Counted from the stretch's first letter, positions 8,377 through 31,716 are shown. The stretch: DNA of 64,000 nt from Stylophora pistillata (GCF_002571385.2 NW_019217946.1:74515-138514); one strand, 5' to 3'. Made by a program: numbers and translations. Notes: a model not told the origin generated them from the letters alone.

Positions 8377-11300
8377 ATGTCCACTAACGAAGGAATAACT
8401 CTCGCTTCGGTGCGGGAGTTTTTAGTCAAAAACAATGGAAAAGTGAAAAACATAGATTTAGTGCATCATTTTCGACAACAGCTGAACGATCCAGCAAACA
8501 AAAGTGAGTCGACAACTTTGTTGTTTTCCGTTTCGATTTGACGGAATATTTTGCTTGTGTTACGTCTGTCTCATTAAAACTAAATTTTTTACCTTCTTTC
8601 AGGTAAGGTACGAGGTGAATTTAAGGAAATTGTGCACACTATTGCCACGGTACAAACTATCGATGTAAGTACGAAATCAAAGTTGTTGGCTATGTACAGC
8701 TGAGTACGTGCTTGAGCAAGAGCTACTTGTAAATGGATAAACTCGATCGATCTGTTTATTCCTCGAAACGGTTTGAGCTTAACTTCAAATTTTCTTCTTA
8801 AATATGCATTGCCAGTTAAGCAATTAGAAAGTGCCTTTCATTTAAATTATTCCCGCATATAAACAATTTGTTAACAATGGTCCGGAGCTAATTTATAGCT
8901 ATAATTTGCTTTCTATACTATTTCATTCGTGATAAATGCTAAGTATTATTTTCTGGCCTCATGTAAAGGCCAATATTGGCATAGATGATAATCACATACT
9001 CGCTGAAACCACTTTTGTTAAATTATGCAAAATAGATTTTAAGACTACACTGTACATCAATTTTAGAGGCATTTTAAGAACTGGCAATGGTTATTAAATA
9101 GAGATACAATGTAATTTAAATGTGAAAGCTTTCAGTCCTTGTTTCATAAATCCAGTGCTTACGTGTAGTTTGTTTTGCTATTAGGTTTTCAAAATTATTA
9201 TCCCCACCAGTCTTCTGTTTCATGTGTATGTTGCTATTTATTATGATTTTTTTGTAAAAACGAGTTCAAATCAGTGTAATTTGTGTTTTATTTCAATATT
9301 ATGTGTAATCTAAAGCAGTAAAAAGAACAAACTACTTTTATTTACATGCAGTCCATTTGGTCAAACTACAACATATGTATTAAGGTGATAGTGAACAAAT
9401 AAAGGGTTGAATAATGGATATATCTAAAGGATAAATTTTGGGTGGTCTGTAAGTGAACATGTGAATACCACTGGCATTTGGAAGGTAAAACTTGACCCTG
9501 TAGAGAGGGTGTTCATGTCTGGAATGATATTTGTTATTTGATAACCTGCTACATGCCTTCCTTTATGTCCTAGCTTCATTAGCTTACCAGGCCTAAAGTA
9601 AAATGGTAATTTGGTTCTATCAACTAAGATGAAATTGTAAATTAGCCACTGTAATGAATAATAAAGCAGACATTTCGAGCATTAGCCCTTTGTCAGAGCA
9701 AAGGGCTAACGCTTGAAACGTCAGCTTTTTTATTTGTTACAGTAGCTAATTTACAATTTCTACTTAGTTGATATAACCAATGAAATTATCTTGTTGCCCT
9801 CACAAACACAGCACCACAGTTTCTTTAGAAACTTTCAGCCTTTAAAGTAAAATGGCACTGGGCTGTTGTGAGTGTCAATAGTCACAACTCCACAAAGGAG
9901 ATCTGGTGTTTGATTTTTGAAGTAAAGTAATGTGGCCATTGAGTGTTGATTAATTCTCCGGCCCTAGTGGTTTGATGAAGTGGATAATGCTTTACATTAA
10001 ATTACAGTAAAATAATTCATTAAATTTTGTTTTCTCTGCAATACAACAGGGAGAGAAGTACTTTGTACTTAAGAAGCCTAAAGAAGCTCCTGCAGTGCTT
10101 CGTAAACCACCCAGGCCATCTAATAAGGCACGGCCTGTATCTCTTCCACCTGTTTTCCGAGGAGTAAAGCTGGAAGAAATGCCGGTAGGCTCAGGGCAAC
10201 AATCACATGCCAGAACCCCGTCAATAACAGGAGATGAATCTCCAGTCCTCAGTCATCCAAATAAGGAAAACAGACCTTTGGAGAAAAGAGAGGGAACAGA
10301 TAGCATGAGTCACTTGGCTAGTTCAGGATCTGTAGACAGTGGTCTAGAGTCCAATGTGAGTTCATTCACATTTTTATAACTGGTTCTCTATAATGTTTAT
10401 TTGAGTTTGAAATGTATGATTGATAAAGTTTTGTACATTTAATTGTATCCTAAAATGCTCTAATGGCTTTTGTGGTTCTAAAAGGTAACAGAGGCTTTGG
10501 AAGTTACAGTACATTCAATCTTAAAGTGATGAGTTCAGAGTTTGAAAAATTAATTGTTAGAGTGGCATCTGTCCTGTCCATTAAAATGTGACTTTTTCTT
10601 CAGTGTTTTCATTTCAAAGACTGGGACAGTTGTAAATTATGAATTAAATGTGTTAATACTTGTTTATAGGGTGGCTCAGTGGGAAGTATGTCTGCTTCAA
10701 CTTTCAAAATGCTGCAAAGTCAGTTTCTAACTGGTGGCAGCGGATCCACTTCTAATATTCAGCCAGAAAGATTGTCACGAAGCAATGATGACCTAGTGAG
10801 TACTAATTTCTATCAGACCACTATATACCTGTACATCAGGTTGTTGATCTGGACTTTAGTGGTCACAAAGTGCTTGTATATATACAGTGTAGGAGTTATT
10901 TAGTATTCTTACATAAATGTATAATTTTACTTGTGGTCAATAAAAGGAGGCTTGAATAGTAAGTGATTGACAGATGTTTGGTTGGGCAGCCAAACTGTGG
11001 AGGTGGAGTAACTTGTAAAGGATTTCCAAGAATTTTGCTAAACAATTTATTTATGGTCACAATATAATAATAATTATAATTATTATAACTCAATGCCATT
11101 TGTTGATGAAAAATCATCAGTTAAAAAATAATCTCCAACATAATTTCCTCAACAGTAAATGGTAACAATAGTAATTCAGCGCAATAATGTTTTTTAATGA
11201 CAAATTGTACCACTAATGTAAAGAAATAAATGAAAAAACGCAATGAAAAGGGTTTTTCTTTTAATTAATTATTAACCTTTCCATCTTACTCCACATGTTT

Positions 11301-14300
11301 CCACCCTTGACATCAACATGCATATTCTCCATACTGTCCTCTATACATTTCCTAACTACTGACTAAGAGAATTTGTATAACAATCTAGAGCTTTTAAGTT
11401 TGTGAACATTTGTCTTATTCTCATGATGTGAATGTGTGATTTAGGGGTGATGGTATAAGGAGATATAGAATGATAGTTACTAGCTAGAGCTGTTCACAGC
11501 TTGCCAAAATTGTTGCGAGAGGTCATGCTTTAACAGGGCTGTGGTCTGGCTGTGCCCAGTGGTCCCTGGTGCCTTACTTTTGCTCTTGGGTGACTCAGGA
11601 ATCTTACTTTTTTCATAAAAAAGCATATGCTGGGCACCCTGGATTTCACAGTTTCAGAGCACTGGGCACCCTGGATTTCACAGTTTCAGAGCACTAGGCT
11701 TCCTTTAATTTTTCTTAGAGCACAGCCTTGTTTAAGAATGCTGCTTATATGGATCAAGCTGAGGGTGTTTCAGACTTATTTTCTCTACTTCCAATTATAT
11801 CTTGAAAGCCATCTTGATTTAAAATAAGGTCTTAAATTTGTTCATGTCTGACTCAATACTGTTCTTGTACATGTATGATTATGTACGTTGACTGTGTTGT
11901 GGTTCAAATATTTCTTTTAAGAGGTTTAATTTTTTGAAAAGCAATTTTCTATTTTTGTTGTTGTTGTTTCTGGTCACAATTATCACAGTGAGCACTTCAT
12001 AAAATTAATACATGTAAGAAAGAAGATTGGCTTGTACATGGTTTAGAATGATTTGAACCAAGGATTAGAATTAAGTGTGAACCACACCAACTAAAATGTA
12101 GTACATCAAAATAAACAATTTTGTGAAGAATTTGATACAGGAAATCATTTTTTTTTTCATAGGATCGAATGGAGGATGACATAGAAGGTTAGTACTATTT
12201 TACACTACATGTATAAAAAAGATTGTTGATCCTAGTTAATCTGTCAAGCACTTCCTGAGGTGTACAGTACATGACTGTACTTGTCTAGTCTTCGTGTTTC
12301 CTGTAGCTGTTTTTGAATGTTAAGTTGTAACATAGTAATTATGGTAATTGACTCTAATGAAGACTTCCACCCAAGTTGTCAAAGTGTCAGTCTCTGCTAC
12401 TGATGATATTCCTTTCTGAACTCCTTCCACCCAGACAATCAGTCTACATGTTCAATTTAAGCTGCACTCTTGACCAAAATTATGAAAACAAGCAAGCAAA
12501 CAGACATGCATATAAACTAACCAACCAACAGACAAAGAAAAGAACATGAACAAAAAAATAATAAGGAACCTGAGTTGAGTTCAACTCGATAGATATTGAT
12601 TGAAGTACTCTGGCTAGAATCCATTTCCAGTGGTGACCTGTTGAGATTCCATTTCCAGTGGTGACCTGTTGAGATCAACAAATTTGAGAAATTTAATGAG
12701 AAATATCACTAGCTCTGTTACATTAGATTATTTGTGACATTTAAACTTTATTTTTAACATTTTTAATCAAAGAAATGGTAAATTCATGATTAGCACCATA
12801 ACACTACATGCAAATTTCAAATACATAAAAGAGTCATCCGTGTTTTTATGTTAGGCTATTACCTTCTCTAAACAAATGTTAAATTTTTTTATTTTCTGCG
12901 AGTGAATATTTATTTTGAGTTGTTTTTTAAATATCAGAAAATTCCTTCGTTAAGATGTTGTGTATATTGTTTCCACTTAAGTTCAAGCAGTTTTTCACGG
13001 CAGTTATGTACGTGTATATGTTTTATTTGTCTTGTTAAGAGTCTTTTCTGTCCCTTGATAATGAAGTTTAGATCTACAAACGTGGAGGTTTTTTCTGTTA
13101 ATTTTTCATTTTGAAATGAATTTCATGGCATGTTTGATCCTGTTTTTTGATTACTGCAATTTTACATTATTTTAAGGATCTTGATTTGTATTCTTCATTT
13201 CTAAGTTTAATGATCCAGTCATATGTACTTTCTTTTGATGTGGCAAATTTCATAAATGAGTGAATTGCAAAATTTTCAATTTCTAATTATGCTAATGGAA
13301 GAGTTTCATAAACTGGGTATATTGATTTCTTTCCTGTGTCAATAATTTATCATGTATCCTTGGCACCTGCTATGACTGCTGCTTCAAATGGACTGAGGTT
13401 TACAACAAGCAGGGTTTTGTGGTTTTGTTAAACGATTTAAACACTTCTTCTCCTGCAATAAATCACAGTGGGACCCCTAGGCACGTGCGCTGTTTTGAGA
13501 TCAATTTAAGGGATTGTTGAATTTAAAGGTTTCAAATCTGTTAGTTATGGTGGTTCCTTTACATGGCTAGAGGTTTGAGAAGCAAAACTAGTGAGTGGGT
13601 ATTTTAAAATATTTTTTAAATAAGTCAGACATCTTCCTTTGAAAAGTGTTTGTAAATGTCGATTTAACCTCAGATTTCCCGTTTCTTGGGTATTTGCCCA
13701 AATAAATTTATTTCTTGCTGCTAATCCCAACAGAAACTTCAATTTAGATATTAAATGTACTTGTAAATATTGATTTTTGGGTTTTTATTTTTAATGCCTT
13801 TCAAAGGCTCTCTCTTCAGTTGATTATTTGTTTGGTGTGGCCAAGCACAACTTTTTTGGACTGTTTACTACTTGTGAATTTTAAAGATTACTATCAATAC
13901 TGACATTAGGGTCAGCGATAACTTAAAAAAACACAAAATTTGTTGGTGGCCCTGTGAGTTATAACGACCCAGTTTCCCTGCATTAAAGCAAATTTCTTAT
14001 CTGTGACAATCAACAGCACTTGTTAGAATGGCCATTTATTTAAATTATAATTTATGGTTTCAGAGCTACTCAGTGAGCACTCTTTTCATGCTCTGCAGCG
14101 TTGTAGTCTAGATAAAGTAGAAGGAATTATTTGAAGTATACAGCAAATTTAAATTTTTTTCGAATTTCATGTGCATGTATTAATTTTACTGGTGGCTACC
14201 ACATATAATGGAGATTGAGTATGAGTGTCAGGACTCAAAATTCTGGCACTGAATGCCATTATGGAATAATGAAACTCACCTCCTTACACTTACAGTATGG

Positions 14301-17300
14301 CACTGTTCTCCAGTGACATGCAGAAAAGGTTCAAGCCTGCTGATATGTTTAAATTTTATCACTCCCTTACCTTCTCAGACAAAAGAAAAAAAGAAAATTT
14401 TCTTCTTTTTGTAACATTTGTAAAAAAATTCTTGTGCAATCATTTTGTTGGTTATTTTTCAAATTGCCTTTTCTCTCCCCAGAGTCAAGTTATAAGGTTT
14501 TTTTAATTCTCCACACTAAGAAACACTGACAATCTGGTTTCAAATTTAATGTTCCCTAAGAATTTATTGTTTGCATCACATTTACTTGATACAGGAAATG
14601 ACATTGATATTGGAAATATATAGTCTGTTTTAGTCACTCCTGTTATCTCAAAGGGTACGCTGTTTGTGCATATTGAAAGATTTTTGTTTTGAGGTACATG
14701 TATTTCCATATAGCAGGATGTTGTTAAGGTGGCACTCCTAAGTCTTTTTGCATAATTATGTTTTTTTTGTCTCTAATAGGAGATGACTTTTTAATGGGAG
14801 GACCAACAGCACATGTAAGGTTATCTACTATCTATTATGTAACAAGTTGTGTTCTGATGATCTCTCCTCACTTCTGTTGTCTAGCCTGTTTCAGGCTCTC
14901 CGTTGGTGGATTTGAGCAATGAGAGGGATCAAGAAATACATATTTGTTGTCAGAGAAATGATTGGGGAACCTGAAAAAACTGTTTTATTAAAAATAAATG
15001 CTTAATTTCTCCTCTGATCCACCCACCTCTGCATAAAAAGTGATACATTAATTTTATCATTGTGTGCTGTTGGGTTTTGGTTGAGTATTGTTGCAATTTC
15101 TGTCTTTCATAACTGAACAGGTACAGTTCCTCCGCTATACCTTGTTTATTTTTTATATGTAAAATTTAGTTGACAGTGATTGTTTGGATGTAATATTTTG
15201 TAGCTGGAGCCACTAGAGAAAGAATGGCTTGTATCAGCAGCTAAAGGAAACAGAGCACAGATCATGTGTCTCTTGGAACAGGATCCCAACTTAGCAGCTA
15301 AAAGGGTGAGTCTTTTAATATGGTTATGTATATGTGTAAAGGTTTTATGGTTGCAAAAAGACTGATACAACAATACAACAATGCTATACAATAATATCTC
15401 TTTCATCTGCAATTTTCATACTTTTCTCTGGTTTTTGGCGTAAAATTTTCTGGTCCATAAAAAATTGAAATATAATTAATTTTTAAAATTACAACAGATA
15501 AGTTCCAGGAAGTAGTTCTTAATGAGTATTTCAATGACAAACTCTGAAAATATGTTATCTTCTTTTCCATTTTAGGACTTTATGCAGGTATGTAAATTAT
15601 CTATTAGTTTAAGTATGATTTGCGAATTATTAATTAGAATTATCTCGAAAGATTACTCAAAATGTATTGTACAATAATTTTTTTTTATTGATTTAAGATG
15701 TTTGTCCACTTTCTGTACCTTTGCTATAAATGTACAATGTAAAGCTGAATGATATTTATCCCAACCCTTCAACCACCAAGAGTGACCAAGACAGAATTTC
15801 TCCTTACTGTACGTAACAAAACAACATCATGCAGAGAGGTGGCGAGAATAAAAACAATATCGATAAAGGGATTGCTAATTGATTCAATTATACTAAATTC
15901 TCATTCACTAGCATCATAAGAATTGTATGGTGGAAAGTAAAAAGAATTAATCGTGGGATCGAGTCAGTTGCTAACTCTACTTTGTTTTCTCTCTTCATTG
16001 CATGTTGAAAGGGGGTAAGTACATTGCTTCTGTATTTTGGCAATTTTATGTATGAAATACAATGCTGTTTATCTACAGTTTTTGATCAAAGTGCTCAGTT
16101 TTTAAGGATCTGTAGGGGACTCTGTTATGGATATTTAAAGTGTAATGGAGCTCATTTTGAAGAAGAGTTTATTGCACATGCTTGGAAAACAAGTGATAGA
16201 AATATCCTTGATTCAAGTAAATGTCAATCAATTAAAATGTGCAAATTACTGAATATTTACCGAAAGGTGTTTTTTGTCTTAATCATCAAAATTGACAAAA
16301 ATTTTCTTGTTGTCAAGTGATGAAGCAAGCAATGAATTAAAACAGTTGTGTTGTTTATATTAACATTAATTTTGTCCTTTTTTTTTCTCTTTCATATAAA
16401 TGCATCTGTCAAAAATTATTTTCATTGTTCCTATGTTGGTTCATGAAAACTGTAGTATGTAAGTACTGATTTAATTAATATGAATTTTGCACATTAAACG
16501 AGAGTGAAAAGTGATTGCACTTGTAGGGTAGGGGAGACTATGAAAACGAAGGGAGGGGTGTCTCAGGCTAGTCTTGGCAAATGCACATCAGTTCTTTTAT
16601 GCTATCATTAATATTAGGAACTTGGGAGCTCCGCGTTTAGGCTTGGCTACATCTATACATTATGAATTATACACATTAAATGAGAGTGAAAAGTGATTCT
16701 GTCTCTCAAATTCTTCCTACACTAAATGTAACAAAAGTACGTGTCTAGCAAAAAAAAGGTAAAATCAGGCAACTTTTTTTTGGTATTTGGAATATTTTTA
16801 TTATTTTGTGGACCATTCGTTTCCCTATGTGATCTTAAACAACAGGACTCCCCAAAAACCAATCAAGCAAATAATTATACTCATGCTTATTAGAGTCAAG
16901 CATGAGACTTATTAGAGTCAAGCATGAGACTTATTAGAGTCAAGCATGTTTGCTTGTTTCGTTTTTTGGGAGTCCTTCTGTTTGCCATCTCCTTTTGGAG
17001 GAAGTCGCATACGTAGGGGCAGCAGGACTGAGTAAAATATAACTTTTACATTAAAACGTAGTCTAGTACTGCCTACAAATTTACGTACAGTGTGGAGCAT
17101 TAAAAGTGGAGCCTTACACGTGAACCCACAAAAAATTACTAATTTCATCATCATAGCAATTTAGTGATTAACAAAGATTAGTATATACTAAAACAGTGGA
17201 TAGCGTTGAAGGCGCGCTCTGATTGGTTAGTCAAACTCCGAATATCCTTTGCTATTTACCTCCGAACAACTCGGGAAAAAATGGCGTCCTGGTTTGCATT

Positions 17301-20300
17301 TGTGACAAGCGAAGAAATCACTCAAATTAACGACGAAGCAGTCCCTTAAAACACAAATAAAGCGACTAAATTTGGTTTGGCCGTGTTTAAAGGTAATGGT
17401 GTAAGGTTCTAACCCGGAGTTTATCGATAAAAACCAATGAGAAAGGTTTTGTTTACAAATGCAAATTAATCTTGCGTGACCTCACTTGTTCACTTCCTCG
17501 CGTGAAAATGTTGGAATCGTTGCTGGAATGTATGAATTAAAATCAATTTTTGTTGGTGTATATTATCTCACTGTTTGAGTATATACTAAAACAACTATTC
17601 ACCTCAGTGTCGGTGGTTAGCGGTGGATATTTACCTCTCCGCTTCACGGCTCGGTTAATATCCATCACTAAACACCTCCACTTCGGTGAATAGTTGTTAA
17701 TTAATTTCAAATTTTGCTTTGGGTTAATAAAGCTTTTCAGGAGTAAGTTCTCATAGCAAGGTTTTGGCAACTTTAAAAGTGTGGAATAATCAATTGGACA
17801 AGAGTAAGGGGTAACACTGATGGAAATGACTTGAATCTCCACAGAGTGCAATCCACTGGGCAGCCAAGCATGGAAGAGCCGACATAGTAAAGCTTCTAGC
17901 TAGTACTGGAATTGATGTGAATGTTAGAACGGTATGGAAATTTTTTTTTTAATCCTTCGGTCTTTTACATCAAAATGATATCAAATTTAAAATTATGACG
18001 CGATCCTCAAGCAAACAAGATGAAGCAACCCTTTTTTCTGATTGACTACCCAACCAGGCAAGATGAAACAATTGTAGTGTTCTGATTGTTTACTCAGCCG
18101 GGCAAGGATTGTCCGCATTTTGTCAGAAAAAAAGTTTAGTTTGCAACTTCTTGACAGGGAAAAAGCTTTGAACCGTATCTTTTTTTACTTTTTTTTTTTT
18201 ATTATTTGGAAGAGTAGTCAAACTAAAACACTCTGGAAAAAACGACTTTTAGTAATCCTGTTTATTGTCTCGGAATGGTTACATAGATAATTGTGATCTC
18301 ATTTTCTTTTGATCTTTTCTTTCATAATCCTGATTATTATCTTGGTTTTTTAAACAGAATGTAAGTATCAGTCGAATTATTCTTAACCATAGATTGTTTA
18401 TTTACTGTTTATCTTGTGCCTTTTTATAGTGGAGAAGTTTATTTACTGTTTATCTTGTGCCTTTTTATAGTGGAGAAGTTTATTTACTGTTTATCTTGTG
18501 CCTTTTTATAGTGGAGAAGTTTGAATTAGTAGACATTGTAGAGATATTCCACGAGTACTGATGAGTTGTTGTTTCTCTCTCTTTGTCCATTTACTCCATG
18601 GATTACTTCAACATATCTCCTAGGGGGTAAGTCATTCCTTTCTAACTGTTTATGTATCGTGATTATTAAAAAACGGCTTTAGTGTATGCCAGTTTTTAGA
18701 ACCTGGAATCAAAATTTTTCATTTTGTGACTTTCAGGTCTTTTCTTGATCTTCTTCATTCTTTAGCATTATTGTCCATCTAAGTGTTTTCTATCTACCAA
18801 ACAAAACAAACAAAGCCTTGCATAGCTTCTTTTACTTTTAGGTGATTTCGCCCATTACATATACTTATTAACCAAGCGCGAGGGCCGTACTGGGAGAATA
18901 TCGGCCCGAGGTCTTGACAGTACGGACCGAGCGCAGCGAGGTCCGTACAAAAAAGACCGAGGGCCGATATTTTTCCAGTACGGTTCCGAGCAAGCTTGGT
19001 TAATAAGAGATTTATTACACGACTGAAGTTCAAAGGGACACAAGTGCGGTTTCATTCGGGACCATTCGGAACAGTGCCCGGTCCAATACTGAGAGAATAT
19101 TGACCGGCAATAGAGCATTTTGATTGGTTGATTTTAGTTATTGGCCCTCTGACTTCCCGAGTCGTGTAATAAAATGCGTTACGCCACGAGAAATTGAGAA
19201 ATTCAAATCTTGCAGCGAGTTTCTAGTAAAGCAGCAGCCAATTTGTGGTAATTGTTCTTCCTTCCTCAGGGGTACACTCCACTTCATCTCGCTGCCATGC
19301 ACGGACGCGATGAAGTCATAAAAATTCTTGTCTCTGAATATGGTGGGTTGACACACTTTTGATATTTTATTCTACTACAGTAATAGTATACGCATTGAAA
19401 CATTCATTGAAATTAACCTAAAGGTGTAGATATTTAACTGACGGTTATTTTGACTGCGTTATTTTACAGATGCGGATATAAACTGTCGTGACTTCAGTGG
19501 CAAGAAACCGAAACAAATGGCCAGAGTCGAAAACCTGACGATTGAAGCACAAGGTACATGAACCGGAAACAGAAGATTATCTTTTGAAAATAAATAATTT
19601 CTATAGCTATTTATTACACAAAAAATTAACTTGCAATCAACTTGAAGAGATAGTTGCAATAAATTCAAATCAGAAGCAAGTAAGGGTGATTATATGCACT
19701 GATGTGTAGGATAAGGGTATCAAAGAGCGTCAACTTTTAGCTCGGTCTTCGTGTAACGAAAGTTGCAATTCCTGTTTTCATGAGCGTGGGAGACAGTGGA
19801 AATCTGAATCCCCGCGTGAAAAGAGTCAGACTTCTTCGTAGATTGAGAAAAGGCCACCGTTGGCAATTCGTTGTAATGGGTGGCATTAAGTTGCTCTGTA
19901 ATAATCATTGGTTGTAGTGACTTATGCAGGCTAATTTGCTTTCTTCTCAGGGCTTCTGGAGTATCAATTCCGAAATTATTCAGGTACTGAAAAAGATAAC
20001 CTTTTTTATGTTTGCTTTGACAATTTTAAGAGTGATGTTTGATTGAGTGTAGCAAAATCGAACTGGCCAAAATGCCAGGTGATTAAAACGCCCTTGGAAG
20101 ATTTCTAGACGCCAATGAGATCTCAAAGGAAATGACTTCAAAAACACGGGCAACCAAGCCGCACTGAGCATCTGATTGGCTTAGTTGAAGGTGTGAATTT
20201 ATCTAAACCAATCATATATAACAGAAGTGTGAAACCAAAGATATCGCGTCAACTCCCAACACTCGATTGGAAATATCTCTTATTTAAGTTACTGAATATC

Positions 20301-23300: not shown

Positions 23301-25506
23301 AATGCTATTATCATTTTTCTGTAGTTTTTGGGGTTACTTTAATTTTTTTATTGTGATTTTTGTCGGAAAAGGGAGGGTGAAGGGGGATTTTATATGTTGT
23401 CGACCAAGGAAAATCCTGACCAGTTAGTCTGTTTTGGGAAAGAGTTTATGTACGCTTATTAAAAACTTCCATAGAAAAATGCACATCATAATTTATTGCC
23501 CGTTGAGTCACCGGCAATGTGTAATTTTCTCTGGACTTGGCTTTGTTTGGTTGATGGATGGGGTAGAAGGGATAAGAAAACTTAGATCTTTGTTTTTTTC
23601 TTGGATTGTTACATTTGTGCGTTGGTATTTTTCTTCCATCCGATATAGACAGCTCAGCACTTTTGTTTTCTTGCTTTTGTACTCCTTAATGTCTGCATCA
23701 TCATTGTCAATACTAGTTTGTTCTTGCGCTGTTAGTTAGAGCCGGCGTGTGTGATGAACGACTTGATTTTATGCGGAGATTGGGTGCTGTTTACAACGTT
23801 TACCTTGCCCAGCGGTCATGCTAACGGTGATGTTTTCGCAAGTAATATGGCTCAAAATATTTCCAACAGATTTTATAGGAATGCATGAAGAGTAGTTTGC
23901 AGTTCTTTACAAGCTTTTACTAGACAAGGACCGTAGTTCACAAAACTGATATGCCACTAGTCAATGTTGAATTAGCTCATATAGATGTTTTGGTCAGGAC
24001 AAATGTTGGGGAAATTTTTAAGGGGTGTTAGGGGAATTTCTAATTCAGCAGGACCTCGGTGAAAAGTGTATCTGTCAGGGAAAAAAACTTGCTTGTTGAA
24101 AGCGAATAGGAGGGAAAGCAGTGGTGTATAATGAAACTTTTTGTGCTTGTTTTGCAGATACATCATCGGAGTCGTCAGGCTACGGCTCGATCAGTAAATA
24201 CGGCTCCCTTAGCTCCAATCCAGGTGTGGCGATGTCCAGTCACTACAACAACAGCGAAAAGGGCGGTGGTAAAAACGAAGCGCCCGATGATAAATCCAGG
24301 TCAAGATCGGTGAGTTGTGTTCTTTTCCTTTCTCAGTTGTAAACCCCCCCCCCACCCCCCACTGTGACCCGTCCCCCGGCTTCCCCCGTCTGTAAGAATG
24401 GAAAACAGTGTAGAAAGATGTTTGGGCCTTTGTGCAGTTAAAAGAGGAGAAATATATGATGTACAGATGTGTGGATGGAAGAGCAGAAAGACTGGACGTT
24501 GTGCAATCGATGTCATGCTTTTAGGATCTAGCGATAACCAAATGCCTTGAAAGCGTGATATTAGTTGCATTCTAAAAGCCCGTCTGTTCTCGCTTTTACA
24601 TCTTCTACATCAACACGTATAGCCCACAATCAGACATATCTAATCCTACATGGCTGCTGTTTCTCACTTATTTCTGTGTAAGATCCCTGATGTGACAACA
24701 GATCACCATTCGCGCGCCAAAGCGACTCGCGCGTCAAAACGACTCGCGTCTTACGAGCTGGTTCGGTAACTCGTGACTCGCTCGATTTTGGGAGGTTTGC
24801 GTGCATGTAAACGATCTGAAGGTGGCTAGTACTAGTTTCCTCGCGCGGGGAACAGGTCACTCTTGCGTCACGCGGGAGAGAAACGTGCGAAAGAAGCGCG
24901 AGATTAAAAGACGAAAATTCAAAACAAAGATGGCGGCGCGAGGCTTTTTTCTACTTTTGTAAGAAGTTTACCTAACAGCGTGTATTTGATGTGTTGAACG
25001 GCCACTGCGTATGCAGGAGACAGAAACGAAGATAAAGAAGATGATTCTCGGAGACATAAAGGTTGCTTCACTTCTAAACGAAATATCCAACCGATATGAA
25101 ATCTTGCGACGGCGAAAAAAGGAGAACTCAAGTGAAGGATAATCTGCCTGAGGTGGAAGAAGAATGTGAAACTTCAAAGAAAATGATATAATATAGCCAG
25201 AAGTTGGGAGTAGGTCCTTTAAGATGGGCCCGGGAGGCTGTCTTTGACGGCTATTGAATGATATTTTCTAAGCAGTAAACGTCTGTAAACATCAAATCGT
25301 AGGTGCTCGCGCGAACACACGCGATAGTCAGCGGTAGCTATAACAGATTATGAGCAAACGCCAATGTTATAGAATCCAGATTTTTAAATGCGCGAGAACG
25401 CGCGTGGGAATTGCTAAACTCACGAAAGCTATTGCATGAAAACAAGTCCGGTGACCCCTTCTTTTTACTGTTCCAGTATGATAATAACGTTGAAAGGAAT
25501 CGTCAG

Positions 25507-29200: not shown

Positions 29201-31716
29201 AAAAATTCTTGGACAAGCGGATTCAGTTTACGTTACTATTGAAATAAATCTCAATAGAAATAAAGTTCGAATGGAGTGCAAAGATTTCTGTCTCTTTCGG
29301 CCGGCGTCCTATCATGTAGTTGATATTAACCAATTTTTGCCCTCAAGGTATTGGTCTTTCGCATCTTTGTCGTTGCAAGGATCGTGAAGGTTCTATCGCG
29401 ATCTTGTCTTAAATTTGATTCTCGCGCGGTTAACACGCGTGTTAGGCACGCTCCCTGATTCTCTATTATATCCTAGATCCATACTGGATTATCTTTGGGT
29501 TTTTTTCCGGCTGCGCTATTCATCCACATCTCAAGGCTTTCGCCTACCCCTCCCTCCCTCCTCACCACTTCGTTTTTCAGACTCAAAACTTGAGCGTTGA
29601 CTGTTGTCTTCAGAAATGACTCAGTCCCATTTTTCTTGGTCCAGGAGTGTTCATTATCTAAGCAACTTTTCCATTTTTTGTTTCTATGTAGTCTTCCATA
29701 GGTAAATTTTTAATGAAAAAGAAGCAGAAGCAGAAAGAACGCGCACCGGTGCCACACTTTCCTTCAAGTAGCACGAGTGCCGGGTAAGTGTTATTTAATT
29801 CAAATTTGACTTTTGTACCAGGTTCTCTGTCCGTAGAGACAAGCGGAGAGCGAGCGAAAAACGCGATAGGACTGGAGAGGAGTCTTACGCCCGCCTTCTT
29901 TTCTCGTCTTCAATTTCTGAGAGCCCTAAAAGGAACGTTGGTGTAGCCAAAAACCTGCCTCGTCGATAGAAATTGAAAGAAAAACAAACAGATAAATGAA
30001 TGGATGAATGGATGAATAAATGAATAAAGGAAAAAGCAAAGAAGTAAAAATATAGGTGAATGAATGAACAATAAAAAGATAAAAAATGAATAAATAAATG
30101 GTGTGATGAATGAAAAACAGACAAATACATGAACAAATAAACTCATAAATGAATAAATACTGAACGAATAAGTAAATATGACGGCGAAGAGGCGATTAAA
30201 ATAAATTAATTACTAACAAGCTGGAAAATAAAACTCAAGAAACTGTTGTTGTAATTCTCAGCTCTCAAAGTTTGATAAAGTACCGTCGAACATCTGATAC
30301 GGCTCAGCCTTTTCAAACCACAGTTCTTCAGAGCAGTTTCCGCAGAATCTTAGCCTCAAGTTTAGAGACCAAACACGGAAGACGACTGTATAATTACACT
30401 ATATAGCCAATAAACTGAAAGAGAACGAGGAATAAAATATCAACCTAAAATAGTAATTGTAACAAATTCAACTTAAGAATTAAGCATTTCATAAGCTGTT
30501 TTTATATACGTAATTTTTAAAAAGTCTCATTTTTTTGTAATAAGCTGACGAAAACGTGCAATTGTAAATAACACTGAAATGATATTCCTTATTCCTTAAA
30601 AATACAAAAAACAACACAATACCAATTTATAGGTTTTTTGTAGATATACTTTGGAAAAGTCATCTTTATAGATAAGAAATTCGAAGGTTATTATATAACG
30701 TGATTTTTTATTTAAAAATAGTTTTATACCTTTTTAACGAATGTGACATAAACAGTTTTCTATAACCGTGACATTTGATATTTATCTCCCAGACCAGCAT
30801 TTTGTTGTTATTTATTTGTTGTTGTTTAAATTGTGGGCTCCTGGTAAATTGTAATACTATTTCGCCTAGTGACCGTGTAGTGATTTGCCTCAAGAGATGT
30901 ATTTATAAGCATATTTTTTAAGCGTTATATTTGAAGTCATGTTTAGTTTGGTCATATAAGTTATGTTGACCTCGACGGTCAAGCTTAAGTTTGGTACTCG
31001 CCGCTGACATGAAACGAAAGTTTGGCTGAGATGCCTGGCAGTTCGAGCCGGGCAGTTCGAGCCTGGCAGCTGAGACGGAATATTGTATTTGCGTCACGGG
31101 AATAAATGCGGGTTAGCGAGATGTTGAAGGTAACTTAGTTCGAATGGGGGAACCCCAACGCTTTTAATAAACGTGGTTGGTAATGAAGGTCATAAAGAGT
31201 CATCATTGTTTTCACATGTTCAATGGTAGGAACTTTCTAAAACGTCAGAAAATTGAACGCACGCTTAAACTTTTCAGTGCTTAGAGTCCTTGGACTTGAG
31301 AACGTAATATGTCATTAATTTATATTCGTAAAATTGTGGAGTTTTCATGAATTTTTTCTAATCAAAAACCCCTCTGAAACTATTTCATAGTTTCACTCAT
31401 CACCATTCGATATCACATACATACAGTACCTCATGCTCCTTGTAGCCACTTATCTGACAAAACCTAGAAAAAATTGGACGAGTTTTTGAGCAAAATAAGG
31501 AGCATAGTTTAGCAAAACCAGTGCAATCCTTGATTGCCCTTGACATTCAAATTGAAAATTCCTCTCAGTATGACGAAAATTTCCGGTACTTTTGTTGACA
31601 GATTTGTGATAAGCACCCCATTATCGGTTGAATCTGGGTCGTTTGAAGGTAGCCCTGGACTCCTGTCACAGCGAACCTACTCCGAGTCTAATATCCTCAA
31701 GTCGACTGGCGTTTAA
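8377..31716 (+). CDS. SOWAH: Ankyrin repeat domain-containing protein SOWAH (sosondowah) homolog, predicted 480 aa, 19 coding exons: 8377-8503, 8603-8664, 10050-10355, 10670-10795, 12163-12187, 14780-14814, 15204-15305, 15576-15587, 16012-16014, 16456-16458, 17845-17931, 18358-18360, 18624-18626, 19270-19342, 19470-19553, 19951-19983, 24158-24309, 29692-29783, 31602-31716
   Basis: The N-terminus MSTNEGITLASVREFLVKNNGKVKNIDLVHHF...FKEIVHTIATVQTIDGEKYFVLKK matches the SOWAH N-terminal domain. The ankyrin region reads LEPLEKEWLVSAAKG...[24 protein letters not shown]...DVNVRTNGGYTPLHLAAMHG...ADINCRDFSGKKPKQ. All introns are GT-AG and phases are consistent (1443 nt in total). AATAAA lies near 32489. 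The last three or four exons are less certain because they are poorly conserved. Confidence 0.9.
9594..9855. mobile_element. Penelope-like fragment with inverted (fold-back) 5' part and 13-bp target-site duplication
   Basis: Imperfect palindrome 9611-9780 centred near 9695. TAAAGTAAAATGG is directly repeated at 9594-9606 and 9843-9855. The right arm is homologous to 7052-7207. Confidence 0.7.
11272..11480. mobile_element. Decayed short non-autonomous DNA element (TTAACC.. terminus, possibly piggyBac-type); related decayed copies near 15764-15960 and 61487-61631
   Basis: Shared motifs (ATTCTCC.TACTGT, GAGAAT(T/A), TTATTCTCAT) and TTAACC/GGGTTAA ends. The superfamily assignment is tentative. 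Confidence 0.4.
11630..11696 (+). repeat. 32-bp tandem duplication
   Basis: CTGGGCACCCTGGATTTCACAGTTTCAGAGCA x2. Confidence 0.9.
15576..15587 (+). CDS. SOWAH: 12-nt microexon of SOWAH (DFMQ)
   Basis: ttttccattttag|GACTTTATGCAG|gtatgt continues LAAKR into the family-typical KRDF(M/I) motif. Confidence 0.88.
16012..16014 (+). CDS. SOWAH: 3-nt microexon of SOWAH (Gly)
   Basis: CTAAC branch point, pyrimidine tract, then aag|GGG|gtaagt. Confidence 0.8.
16456..16458 (+). CDS. SOWAH: 3-nt microexon of SOWAH (Tyr)
   Basis: More than 100 nt of AG-free sequence with a pyrimidine tract, then tag|TAT|gtaagt. Confidence 0.8.
16887..16948 (+). repeat. 22-bp tandem repeat, ~3 copies
   Basis: CTTATTAGAGTCAAGCATGAGA repeated. 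Confidence 0.9.
17177..17700 (+). mobile_element. Non-autonomous Crypton-like (tyrosine recombinase transposon) remnant; second decayed copy at ~60589-60864
   Basis: Disrupted ORF at 17281, MASWFAFVTSEEITQINDEAVP*NTNKATKFGLAVFK, resembles the N-terminus of Crypton/DUF3504-type proteins. It has a terminal palindrome ACAACTATTCACC...GGTGAATAGTTGT and a repeated AGTATATACTAAAACA. Confidence 0.6.
18358..18360 (+). CDS. SOWAH: 3-nt microexon of SOWAH (Asn)
   Basis: Long pyrimidine tract and ~70-nt AG-free zone, then cag|AAT|gtaagt. Confidence 0.8.
18396..18522 (+). repeat. 41-bp tandem repeat, 3 perfect copies
   Basis: GTTTATTTACTGTTTATCTTGTGCCTTTTTATAGTGGAGAA at 18396, 18437 and 18478. Confidence 0.95.
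18624..18626 (+). CDS. SOWAH: 3-nt microexon of SOWAH (Gly)
   Basis: Pyrimidine tract and ~55-nt AG-free zone, then tag|GGG|gtaagt. Confidence 0.8.
18860..19171. mobile_element. Palindromic non-autonomous interspersed element
   Basis: ~145-bp fold-back CTTATTAACCAAGC...GCTTGGTTAATAAG, followed by a segment bounded by TTTATTACACGACT / AGTCGTGTAATAAA. GC-rich relative to the intron. Confidence 0.65.
21570..22200 (-). mobile_element. 5'-truncated CR1/L2-group LINE (ORF2 C-terminus, 3'UTR, (AATG)n tail)
   Basis: ORF 22128-21871 (...DSYNTRNSNFFHIPHCRTNFRKFSIRFQGPKFFNTL...) is typical of the post-RT C-terminus of CR1/L2-group ORF2. (TTCA)n at 21571-21591 is the tail. Confidence 0.8.
25539..26747. 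other. Assembly gap (N 26003-26228) with ~460-bp near-identical duplicated flanks
   Basis: 25539-26002 is almost identical to 26283-26747, and each copy is preceded by a long poly-A. This is typical of an unmerged contig overlap. Confidence 0.85.
29975..30180 (+). repeat. Degenerate (AATG/AATA)n microsatellite
   Basis: Runs of AATGAATAAA and GATGAATG; explains the Phe/Ile/His-rich spurious minus-strand ORFs. Confidence 0.8.

What the first reader, a model, noticed from the sequence alone, without database searches (positions are those of the whole stretch)
15576..18626. Ankyrin loops of SOWAH spelled one codon per exon: four 3-nt microexons in two tandem pairs
Seen in sequence: joining the obvious exons leaves two residues missing in each of two ankyrin linkers (KRDFMQ--SAIHWAAKHG and DVNVRT--GYTPLHLAAMHG). 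Each of the two intervals contains two AG|NNN|GTAAGT sites, in order GGG (16012), TAT (16456), then AAT (18358), GGG (18624). Including them gives DFMQ-G-Y-SAIHW and VNVRT-N-G-GYTPLH. Established knowledge: SOWAH proteins read DF(M/I)xGFTALHWAAK and DVNxRSxGGYTPLHLA at these positions, and vertebrate SOWAH genes are essentially intronless. Eight fixed bases occur about once per 65 kb at uniform composition, so four hits in under 3 kb with the right codons in the right order are unlikely to be chance. Inference: these are real single-codon exons that automated annotation would likely miss. All are phase 0, so any combination with the 12-nt exon keeps the frame (up to 32 variants). This could tune the ankyrin beta-hairpin binding surface one residue at a time. 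If the organism is a cnidarian, this lies outside the bilaterian Srrm3/4 eMIC microexon programme. I cannot verify whether it has been described before.
Basis: partly seen in the sequence, partly recalled or inferred. Interest (0 to 1): 0.95.

Follow-up and report, generated by a model that had tools for sequence, protein, structure and literature searches.

The report
Four conserved single-codon exons in SOWAH
A coral ankyrin-repeat gene (SOWAH) really does contain four exons of only three bases each. RNA reads show all four in the mature message, the same four sit in sea anemones and a sea snail, and almost all public gene models miss them.

Summary

- **Sites.** The four AG|NNN|GTAAGT sites (16012 GGG, 16456 TAT, 18358 AAT, 18624 GGG) are the only such sites on either strand of the 64-kb window.
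- **RNA.** Reads and contigs from independent studies carry exactly the predicted letters: the 12-nt exon + GGG + TAT in 44 of 44 junction reads, and AAT + GGG in 28 of 28. No other canonical two-piece origin exists in the introns.
- **Copy number.** The gene is single copy, with no retrocopy.
- **Conservation.** The same layout (12-nt exon, G, Y, 87/90-nt exon, N/H, G) is present in Orbicella, Porites, Actinia, Nematostella and the gastropod Babylonia. It therefore predates the cnidarian-bilaterian split. A tunicate orthologue is intronless and encodes the same residues contiguously.
- **Inclusion.** It looks constitutive: all 40 transcript-derived coral proteins covering the region carry all four residues. 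The idea of 32 isoforms tuning the surface is not supported.
- **Annotation.** RefSeq or GenBank models for this gene lack the residues, end at this point or split the gene in about 13 cnidarians, 10 molluscs and one spider.
- **Shared signals.** All 24 donors are GTRAGT, the AG-free zones upstream are long, and the pyrimidine tracts are displaced upstream.

No paper was found that describes these exons.

The parts
8377..8503 (+). Coding exon 1 of the SOWAH orthologue (start codon at 8377; N-terminal winged-helix part)
   Evidence: tblastn of the transcript-derived protein P0025; sequence read
8603..8664 (+). Coding exon 2
10050..10355 (+). Coding exon 3 (102 aa; used as the search query)
10670..10795 (+). 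Coding exon 4
12163..12187 (+). Coding exon 5, 25 nt (DRMEDDIE + 1 base)
   Evidence: inferred from a 100% peptide match and the splice signals
14780..14814 (+). Coding exon 6, 35 nt
15204..15305 (+). Coding exon 7 (LEPLEKEW...AAKR); donor GTGAGT
   Evidence: covered by RNA reads
15576..15587 (+). 12-nt exon GACTTTATGCAG (DFMQ)
   Evidence: Its letters lie between the two sides of joint 15306>17845 in the X2 contig and in 44 X24 reads
16012..16014 (+). 3-nt microexon 1, GGG (Gly266; Ank profile position 2 of repeat 1)
   Evidence: Gly is invariant in 21 SOWAH proteins
16456..16458 (+). 3-nt microexon 2, TAT (Tyr267; Ank position 3)
   Evidence: TAT in all six species
17845..17931 (+). 87-nt exon (SAIHWAAKHG...DVNVRT); Ank profile positions 4-32
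   Evidence: single copy in the genome
18358..18360 (+). 3-nt microexon 3, AAT (Asn297; Ank position 33, hairpin tip)
18624..18626 (+). 3-nt microexon 4, GGG (Gly298; Ank position 1 of repeat 2)
   Evidence: GGG in all six species; Gly in at least 90% of 21 SOWAH proteins
19270..19342 (+). 73-nt exon (GYTPLHLAAMHG...)
19470..19553 (+). 84-nt exon (DADINCRD...)
   Evidence: joint 19341>19469 (cut +1)
19951..19983 (+). 33-nt exon (LLEYQFRNYS)
24158..24312 (+). Serine-rich exon (3' end approximate)
29692..29784 (+). Exon (SSIGKFLMKKK...; 3' end approximate)
31603..31716 (+). Last coding exon with stop codon (5' end approximate)

Best explanation
The window holds the single-copy SOWAH (sosondowah) orthologue of a stony coral. 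The species is Stylophora pistillata, judged from the named members of the protein's cluster.

**What is there.** In its ankyrin domain, five consecutive tiny exons (12, 3 and 3 nt, then 3 and 3 nt after an 87-nt exon) are spliced constitutively into the mRNA. Each 3-nt exon encodes one loop residue of an ankyrin repeat. Gly and Tyr are profile positions 2 and 3 of repeat 1. Asn and Gly are position 33 of repeat 1 and position 1 of repeat 2.

**Age.** The arrangement was already present in the common ancestor of cnidarians and bilaterians. It is kept in stony corals, sea anemones and at least gastropod molluscs. It is absent from the intronless tunicate gene.

**How it most likely works (inferred, about 50%).** A 3-nt exon leaves no room for exon definition, nor for U2AF35 and U1 to bind side by side. 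Recognition therefore seems to rest on two things.

- The donor pairs with U1 almost perfectly on its intron side. All 24 donors are GTRAGT, and position +7 is always A when the exon ends in T.
- The branch point and pyrimidine tract lie far upstream, behind a long AG-free zone. The AG is then needed only at the second catalytic step.

The flanking introns are probably removed one after the other. After the first removal, each microexon, joined to its neighbour, is used again as a splice site. This resembles a recursive splice site that leaves three bases behind.
For: **Shown**

- Sites and their uniqueness.
- RNA: joint 15306>17845 carries the 17 letters that equal the 12-nt exon (minus its shared G) + GGG + TAT. 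This is seen in a polyA RNA contig (X2, depth 272) and in 44 of 44 X24 reads. Joint 17931>19269 carries AATGG (+G), in the same contig and in 28 of 28 X24 reads. X21 shows the same two joints with 4 and 12 reads.
- The only canonical decomposition into two or fewer pieces uses the proposed sites.
- The 87-nt exon and the whole protein map to one locus only.
- Transcript-derived 480-aa proteins that match the window's larger exons at 100% in the ankyrin region contain DFMQ-G-Y-SAIHW and VRT-N-G-GYTPLH.
- All 40 transcript-derived proteins from five coral clusters that cover the region carry all four residues.
- Orthologous loci of Orbicella, Porites, Actinia, Nematostella and Babylonia have the same sites in the same order. 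The chance expectation is 0.001-0.03 per site.
- The intronless Styela gene encodes the same residues.
- Pfam places the residues at Ank positions 2, 3, 33 and 1. An AlphaFold model puts them in loops of a confident domain, pLDDT 86-96.

**Cis features**

- GTRAGT donors: 24/24 microexons against 8/18 neighbouring exons, p = 3e-5.
- +7 A: 14/14 when the exon ends in T against 3/10 when it ends in G, p = 3e-4.
- AG-free zone: median 70.5 nt against 38.5 nt, p = 7e-5.
Against: - Only about 2% and 6% of the two raw-read runs were read, and their tissues and stages are unknown. Rare or conditional skipping cannot be excluded.
- Contigs drop rare variants.
- For X21 the letters between the joints were not printed.
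- The bilaterian case rests on one genome locus without RNA reads, plus transcript-derived proteins of unnamed organisms.
- The cis-feature statistics pool related species and are not phylogenetically independent.
- The order of intron removal and the late use of the AG were not observed. They are inference.
Confidence: 0.9

Rival explanations
1. The microexons are regulated cassettes. Different combinations are included in different tissues or stages, changing the ankyrin hairpin loops one residue at a time.
For: All the exons are phase 0, so any combination keeps the frame. Other 3-nt microexons are alternative, for example in cytohesin-1 (PMC6314551), RPS24 (PMC12207440) and MAP4K5 (PMC8632122).
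Against: - All 44 and all 28 junction reads in X24 include both exons of each pair, and the X2 contig agrees.
- 40 of 40 assembled transcript proteins from five coral clusters contain all four residues.
- Gly266 is invariant and Gly298 nearly so across 21 SOWAH proteins, including those from intronless genes. These are structural positions of the repeat.
- A UGC motif lies close upstream of only one of the four acceptors.
Confidence: 0.07
2. The extra six letters do not come from the proposed intronic sites. They could come from another allele or an assembly error in which the exons are longer, from a paralogue or retrocopy, or from other tiny exons.
For: A 3-nt match can occur anywhere, and short-read aligners cannot place it. 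That is why the tool lists the letters as lying 'between' the two sides of a joint.
Against: - There is no second copy of the exon or the gene in the 398-Mb assembly.
- No 6-nt exon exists, and no other decomposition into one or two pieces. Every alternative needs three or more pieces, including 1-nt exons with weak donors.
- The same codons sit at the same kind of site, in the same order, in five other genomes.
Confidence: 0.01
3. The four sites are chance matches or decoy splice sites without function.
For: None beyond the prior that AG...GT pairs are common.
Against: - The expected number is 0.06 in 3 kb and four were observed.
- RNA carries the letters.
- The sites are conserved across more than 20 independent positions in other species.
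Confidence: 0.005

Closest known systems
Single 3-nt microexons of animals: mouse Ncam and Drosophila TnT (cited in PMC8042270), cytohesin-1 (PMC6314551), MAP4K5 (PMC8632122)
   Same: An internal exon of three bases flanked by canonical AG and GT. It adds one residue and is often missed by aligners and annotation.
   Different: Those are single, mostly alternative exons. Here there are four in one gene, as two back-to-back pairs next to a 12-nt exon. They are apparently constitutive and are shared by cnidarians and a mollusc.
Human RPS24, three consecutive microexons of 3, 18 and 22 bp (PMC12207440, PMC11162997)
   Same: Consecutive microexons that include a 3-bp one.
   Different: The RPS24 exons are alternative, lie at the C-terminal end of the reading frame, and only one of them is 3 bp. 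Here both members of each pair are 3 nt, so one intron is bounded by 3-nt exons on both sides, and the exons lie inside a folded domain.
Conserved plant microexon clusters of 1-15 nt, with adjacent 5-nt and 12-nt exons in Peptidase M1 (PMC8831610, PMC11096116)
   Same: Constitutive, ancient microexons inside conserved domains. They are pervasively misannotated, have strong GTRAGT donors, and are lost by wholesale intron loss in some lineages.
   Different: Different kingdom, different genes and different exon sizes. No tandem 3-nt pairs are reported there.
SRRM3/4 (eMIC)-dependent neuronal microexons of bilaterians (PMC8797185; bioRxiv 10.64898/2026.01.16.699960)
   Same: Very short in-frame exons in surface loops. 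The preprint reports an extended distance from the branch point to the 3' splice site, similar to the long AG-free zones found here.
   Different: Those exons are switch-like and tissue-regulated, and depend on UGC motifs and the eMIC domain. These are included in every read seen, lack a consistent UGC motif, and occur in a cnidarian.
Recursive splice sites, also called ratchet points (AG|GTAAGT, a zero-length exon); from my own knowledge of the Drosophila and vertebrate literature, not checked here
   Same: A 3' splice site lies directly next to a consensus GTAAGT donor, which implies stepwise use of the same spot.
   Different: Recursive sites leave nothing in the mRNA. Here three coding bases remain. 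Stepwise removal was not shown.

Membership tests
Microexon (internal exon, 3-nt class) | Canonical AG acceptor and GT donor directly flanking the exon | tested here: met
   AG|NNN|GTAAGT at all four sites, each behind a pyrimidine-rich tract
Microexon (internal exon, 3-nt class) | The exon's letters are present in mature RNA between the neighbouring exons | tested here: met
   the between-joint letters equal the 12-nt exon + GGG + TAT, and AAT + GGG. Seen in one polyA contig and in 44/44 and 28/28 raw reads
Microexon (internal exon, 3-nt class) | Unambiguous genomic origin within the intron | tested here: met
   the only canonical decomposition into two or fewer pieces; the same sites in five other genomes
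SOWAH / sosondowah ankyrin-repeat proteins | N-terminal SOWAH winged-helix domain (PF25877) | tested here: inconclusive
   Precomputed Pfam hits list PF25877 for the transcript proteins P0025 and P0004. The N-terminus aligns with named SOWAH proteins, with invariant columns. My own hmmscan of P0025 did not list PF25877; the local library may lack that model
SOWAH / sosondowah ankyrin-repeat proteins | Two ankyrin repeats after a disordered linker | tested here: met
   Ank and Ank_2 hits on the exons and on P0025 (E 6e-18); helices at 269-275, 279-287, 302-308 and 312-321 with pLDDT 86-96
SOWAH / sosondowah ankyrin-repeat proteins | Full-length similarity to named family members | tested here: met
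   named SOWAHA/B/C proteins of vertebrates and invertebrates at E 1e-40 to 1e-114; the same 90% cluster as the Stylophora 'SOWAHC-like' protein
eMIC (SRRM3/4)-regulated neuronal microexons | Tissue-regulated, switch-like alternative inclusion | tested here: not met
   no skipped form in the reads or in 40 assembled transcript proteins. The tissues of the runs are unknown
eMIC (SRRM3/4)-regulated neuronal microexons | UGC-containing enhancer close upstream of the acceptor | tested here: not met
   TGC within 40 nt upstream of only one of the four acceptors (16012)
eMIC (SRRM3/4)-regulated neuronal microexons | Dependence on an eMIC-domain protein | not tested
   I did not search for Srrm genes in this genome
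Recursive splice site (ratchet point) | Zero-length exon: the acceptor AG abuts the donor GT and nothing is retained | tested here: not met
   Three bases lie between AG and GT, and they are retained in the mRNA
Recursive splice site (ratchet point) | Stepwise removal of the flanking intron segments | not testable with these tools
   No intermediates were listed

The most novel reading that the evidence does not exclude
The two tandem pairs of single-codon exons are not a neutral relic. They would be kept because they are spliced by an obligatory ordered, recursive-like pathway, in which each 3-nt exon is a ratchet point that leaves a codon behind. On this reading the fragmented structure has itself been under selection for over half a billion years, for example as a kinetic checkpoint or a regulated step in making the SOWAH ankyrin domain. 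That would make this locus a natural model for how the spliceosome handles exons too short for exon definition.
Probability: 0.25. Interest if true: 0.85.

Novelty: new variant of a known kind. Interest (0 to 1): 0.72.

Why it matters
**For splicing research.** Three-base exons are known as isolated, mostly alternative curiosities. Here four of them form two back-to-back pairs beside a 12-nt exon inside one folded domain. They are spliced constitutively and are shared by corals, sea anemones and a snail. This may be among the most fragmented conserved coding stretches described. It gives a compact natural test case for three questions:

- how splice sites only three bases apart are recognised;
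- whether flanking introns must be removed in a fixed order;
- why such structures persist.

**For genome annotation.** The practical consequence is immediate. The SOWAH gene model is truncated, split in two, or short by 2 to 8 residues in nearly every cnidarian and mollusc annotation examined, including both public models of this coral. A simple rule would repair these models: look for AG|NNN|GTRAGT islands wherever two residues are missing from a conserved motif. The same rule probably applies to other genes.

Tried and rejected
- **Retrocopy or paralogue as the source of the reads.** Rejected: the 87-nt exon and the non-ankyrin parts of the protein match one locus only.
- **A single 6-nt exon, or other splits of GGGTAT and AATGGG.** None exists with two or fewer pieces.
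- **RBFOX (GCATG) or UGC motifs as a shared enhancer.** GCATG occurs upstream of only one acceptor, and UGC close to only one. I did not pursue this as a code.
- **A shared sequence motif upstream of the acceptors across species.** Inspection showed only loose TGG and TTCAAC recurrences. These are not convincing.
- **Known RNA families in the introns.** None found.
- **Arthropod locus.** The Penaeus locus (L009) ended before the ankyrin exons, so arthropod gene structure could not be read.
- **Look-ups that found no record.** Pocillopora, Acropora and Exaiptasia proteins.
- **Joined model.** I did not build or search a joined spliced model of the window's gene. Exons were searched one by one by reference, and the public transcript-derived proteins P0025 and P0142 served in place of the joined product.
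Full report
**1. The observation**

Reading 15000-19800 and a pattern count confirm four sites of the form AG|NNN|GTAAGT on the + strand: 16012-16014 (GGG), 16456-16458 (TAT), 18358-18360 (AAT) and 18624-18626 (GGG).
- They are the only matches to AGNNNGTAAGT on either strand of the 64-kb window.
- Base composition predicts 1.3 per strand per 64 kb, and 0.06 in the 3-kb interval.
- Each site follows a pyrimidine-rich tract.
- The neighbouring exons are 15204-15305, 15576-15587 (12 nt, DFMQ), 17845-17931 and 19270-19342.
- All seven introns among these eight exons (15204-15305 to 19270-19342) are phase 0.

**2. RNA evidence**

One search for sequencing runs showed that the organism is a coral, and offered RNA runs from several studies. 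I laid four of them on 15100-19700.
- **First joint.** The aligner cannot place 3-nt exons, so it reports a joint 15306>17845 with 17 letters 'between'. Those letters are the 12-nt exon (its first G is absorbed by the left side), followed by GGG and TAT. They occur in a polyA-RNA contig (X2, depth 272) and in 44 X24 reads, which is the whole count for that joint.
- **Second joint.** Joint 17931>19269 carries AATGG, and the G at 19269 completes AAT GGG. This is in the same contig and in 28 X24 reads, again the whole count.
- **Third run.** X21, from another study, shows the same two joints with 4 and 12 reads. Its between-letters were not printed.
- **Strand.** Exon coverage lies on the 'first mate on minus' side, as expected for a + strand transcript in a stranded library.
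- **The RefSeq join.** No direct join of 15305 to 17845, as drawn in the RefSeq model, was listed.

**3. Could the letters come from elsewhere?**

- An exhaustive search for ways to build GGGTAT or AATGGG from ordered pieces flanked by AG and GT/GC finds only the proposed sites at two or fewer pieces. Every alternative needs three or more pieces, including 1-nt exons with poor donors.
- The 87-nt exon is single copy in the 398-Mb assembly.
- The non-ankyrin parts of the protein match this locus only. A retrocopy or paralogue is therefore excluded.

**4. What the gene is**

- Exon 10050-10355 retrieved orthologues. One is a full-length transcript-derived coral protein whose precomputed Pfam record lists WHD_SOWAH plus Ank.
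- A 480-aa transcript-derived protein (P0025/P0142) matches the window's exons essentially perfectly. It reads DFMQ-G-Y-SAIHW and VRT-N-G-GYTPLH.
- Its 90% cluster contains named Stylophora pistillata proteins, so the window is most likely from that species.
- The full model has 19 coding exons from 8377 to 31716. Eight of them are 35 nt or shorter.
All searches used single exons by reference or public proteins.

**5. Where the residues sit**

- Pfam aligns the 87-nt exon to Ank profile positions 4-32, and the next large exon to positions 2-22.
- Gly and Tyr are therefore positions 2 and 3 of repeat 1. Asn is position 33 of repeat 1 and Gly is position 1 of repeat 2.
- In an AlphaFold model built on 21 family members, the ankyrin region is confident (pLDDT 86-96). 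Residues 260-268 and 288-301 are the loops before the repeat helices.
- Gly266 is invariant and Gly298 is at least 90% conserved across the 21 SOWAH proteins. These include vertebrate and tunicate proteins; the tunicate gene was seen here to be intronless.

**6. Conservation of the gene structure**

I obtained genomic loci for four other anthozoans and scanned the two homologous intervals. I then did the same for a gastropod.
- **Anthozoans.** Orbicella, Porites, Actinia and Nematostella each contain a 12-nt exon (DFML or DFTS). It is followed by AG|GGN|GTRAGT, then AG|TAT|GTAAGT, the 87/90-nt exon, AG|AAT or CAT|GTRAGT, and AG|GGG|GTRAGT, in that order. Across all the intervals there is only one other AGNNNGTRAG site.
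- **Gastropod.** Babylonia areolata shows the same: a 12-nt exon (DIAN), then GGG, TAT, the 90-nt exon, CAT and GGG. No other such site lies in 3.5 and 3.3 kb of intron.
- **Chance.** The expectation is 0.001-0.03 per site.
- **Tunicate.** The Styela orthologue is a single exon encoding DFVFGYTALHW and SISNGGYTAMH.

The structure therefore predates the cnidarian-bilaterian split. By general knowledge that split is more than 600 million years old.

**7. Further support from bilaterians**

- Annotated proteins of nine molluscs (Babylonia, Nucella, Solemya, Physella, Lymnaea, Mytilus, Potamilus, Sinanodonta and Bulinus) and of the spider Argiope lack six and/or two residues at exactly these places. 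Mactra lacks the second pair only.
- Transcript-derived relatives carry the residues. One example is P0147, 79% identical to Babylonia in this region. Another is P0037, nearly identical to the Mytilus model apart from these residues.
- The organisms behind those transcript proteins are not named, so this support is indirect.

**8. Constitutive or alternative?**

- Beyond the read counts, I examined every member of five coral protein clusters. All 40 transcript-derived sequences that cover the region have all four residues.
- The only product lacking them is a genome annotation (Pocillopora meandrina).
- The residues are conserved structural positions.
- I therefore rate combinatorial tuning as unlikely (about 7%). 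Unsampled tissues leave some room for it.

**9. Annotation**

- **This coral.** Both public models are wrong. The RefSeq protein (472 aa) lacks DFMQ, G, Y, N and G. The original GenBank protein has DFMQ but none of the four microexon residues.
- **Models that run into the intron.** They do so right after the preceding exon, the 12-nt exon or the first microexon, and stop there. This affects Orbicella, Oculina, Porites, Acropora, Pocillopora damicornis, Montipora (two species) and Nematostella.
- **Split genes.** In Nematostella, Montipora and Pocillopora verrucosa the ankyrin half is a separate gene model.
- **Partial skips.** The Actinia model omits the first group, and the Desmophyllum model omits everything up to GYTPLH.
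- **Correct models.** The Exaiptasia models are complete. Annotation pipelines can therefore place 3-nt exons when transcripts guide them.

**10. How they are recognised**

These points are observed.
- All 24 microexon donors in six species are GTRAGT (19 are GTAAGT), against 8 of 18 donors of the neighbouring ordinary exons (p = 3e-5).
- When the exon ends in T, position +7 is A in 14 of 14 cases. When it ends in G, it is A in 3 of 10 (p = 3e-4). This is the pattern expected if pairing with U1 must be made up on the intron side.
- The nearest upstream AG is a median of 70.5 nt away, against 38.5 nt for the neighbours (p = 7e-5).
- The most pyrimidine-rich stretch lies at about -23 to -43 rather than next to the AG. 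Branch-point-like CTAAC motifs often lie 40-80 nt upstream.
- These tests pool related species, although the introns are otherwise unalignable.
- A 2026 preprint reports a similarly extended distance from branch point to 3' splice site for vertebrate neural microexons.

The rest is inferred. The first catalytic step probably relies on the distal branch point and tract, and the AG is probably read late. Because U1 and the 3' splice-site factors cannot sit three bases apart, the flanking introns are probably removed one after another, in a manner akin to recursive splicing. None of this was observed.

There is a shared cis-architecture, but I found no evidence for a dedicated factor or motif.

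**11. Novelty**

- Full-text searches found papers on single 3-nt microexons, on RPS24's 3/18/22-bp series and on plant microexon clusters.
- No paper combines SOWAH with microexons.
- No description of tandem 3-nt exons turned up.
- The library does not cover most subscription journals, so prior description cannot be excluded.
- I class the finding as a new variant of a known kind. The exons are tandem, constitutive, single-codon, and very old.

Noticed in passing
window 18864-19173, 17177-17700 and 15781-15807: Introns of the gene hold high-copy elements with terminal or internal inverted repeats (arms 18885-18928/18940-18983, and 17178-17198/17569-17589). In the RNA runs they reach contig depths up to about 190,000, with many loose ends at their borders. 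That fits abundant MITE-like repeats transcribed from many loci.
   Followed up: partly
window 18396-18522 and 16886-16951: Perfect tandem repeats sit inside the introns next to the microexons: 41-nt spacing x3 between microexons 3 and 4, and 22 nt x3 after microexon 2. They show no conservation in other species.
   Followed up: no
window 12163-12187, 14780-14814 and 19951-19983: The same gene has three more small exons (25, 35 and 33 nt). In all, 8 of its 19 coding exons are 35 nt or shorter.
   Followed up: partly
the four microexons in window, L003, L004, L005, L006 and L007: The third codon position of the 24 microexons is only ever G or T: TAT 6/6, AAT or CAT 6/6, GGG 10 and GGT 2. Synonymous C or A never occurs. 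This hints that the exon's last base is constrained by splicing as well as by coding.
   Followed up: partly
L003 10001-29684 (Nematostella); also Montipora and Pocillopora verrucosa proteins P0261, P0263 and P0284: Public annotation splits the SOWAH gene into two gene models at the microexon region. The second model starts at an internal Met of the GYTPLHLAAMHG exon. The Montipora capricornis model XP_068725760.1 includes the first microexon Gly and then runs on into the intron.
   Followed up: yes
window 19478: A>G in 21 of 35 X21 reads and in none of 39 X24 reads. This is most simply a polymorphism between colonies. RNA editing was not tested.
   Followed up: no
window 15782-16212: One low-depth RNA-run contig (X2, depth 8.9) runs unspliced across microexon 1, with 7 differences and an 8-nt insertion. 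It may be another allele, pre-mRNA or DNA carry-over. It says nothing about splicing order.
   Followed up: no
same genome, another piece (note s1-776336): The scan's notes list a 6-nt microexon next to a U12 intron in a FAM92/CIBAR gene of this genome. Very small exons may be more common in this genome than its annotation shows.
   Followed up: no
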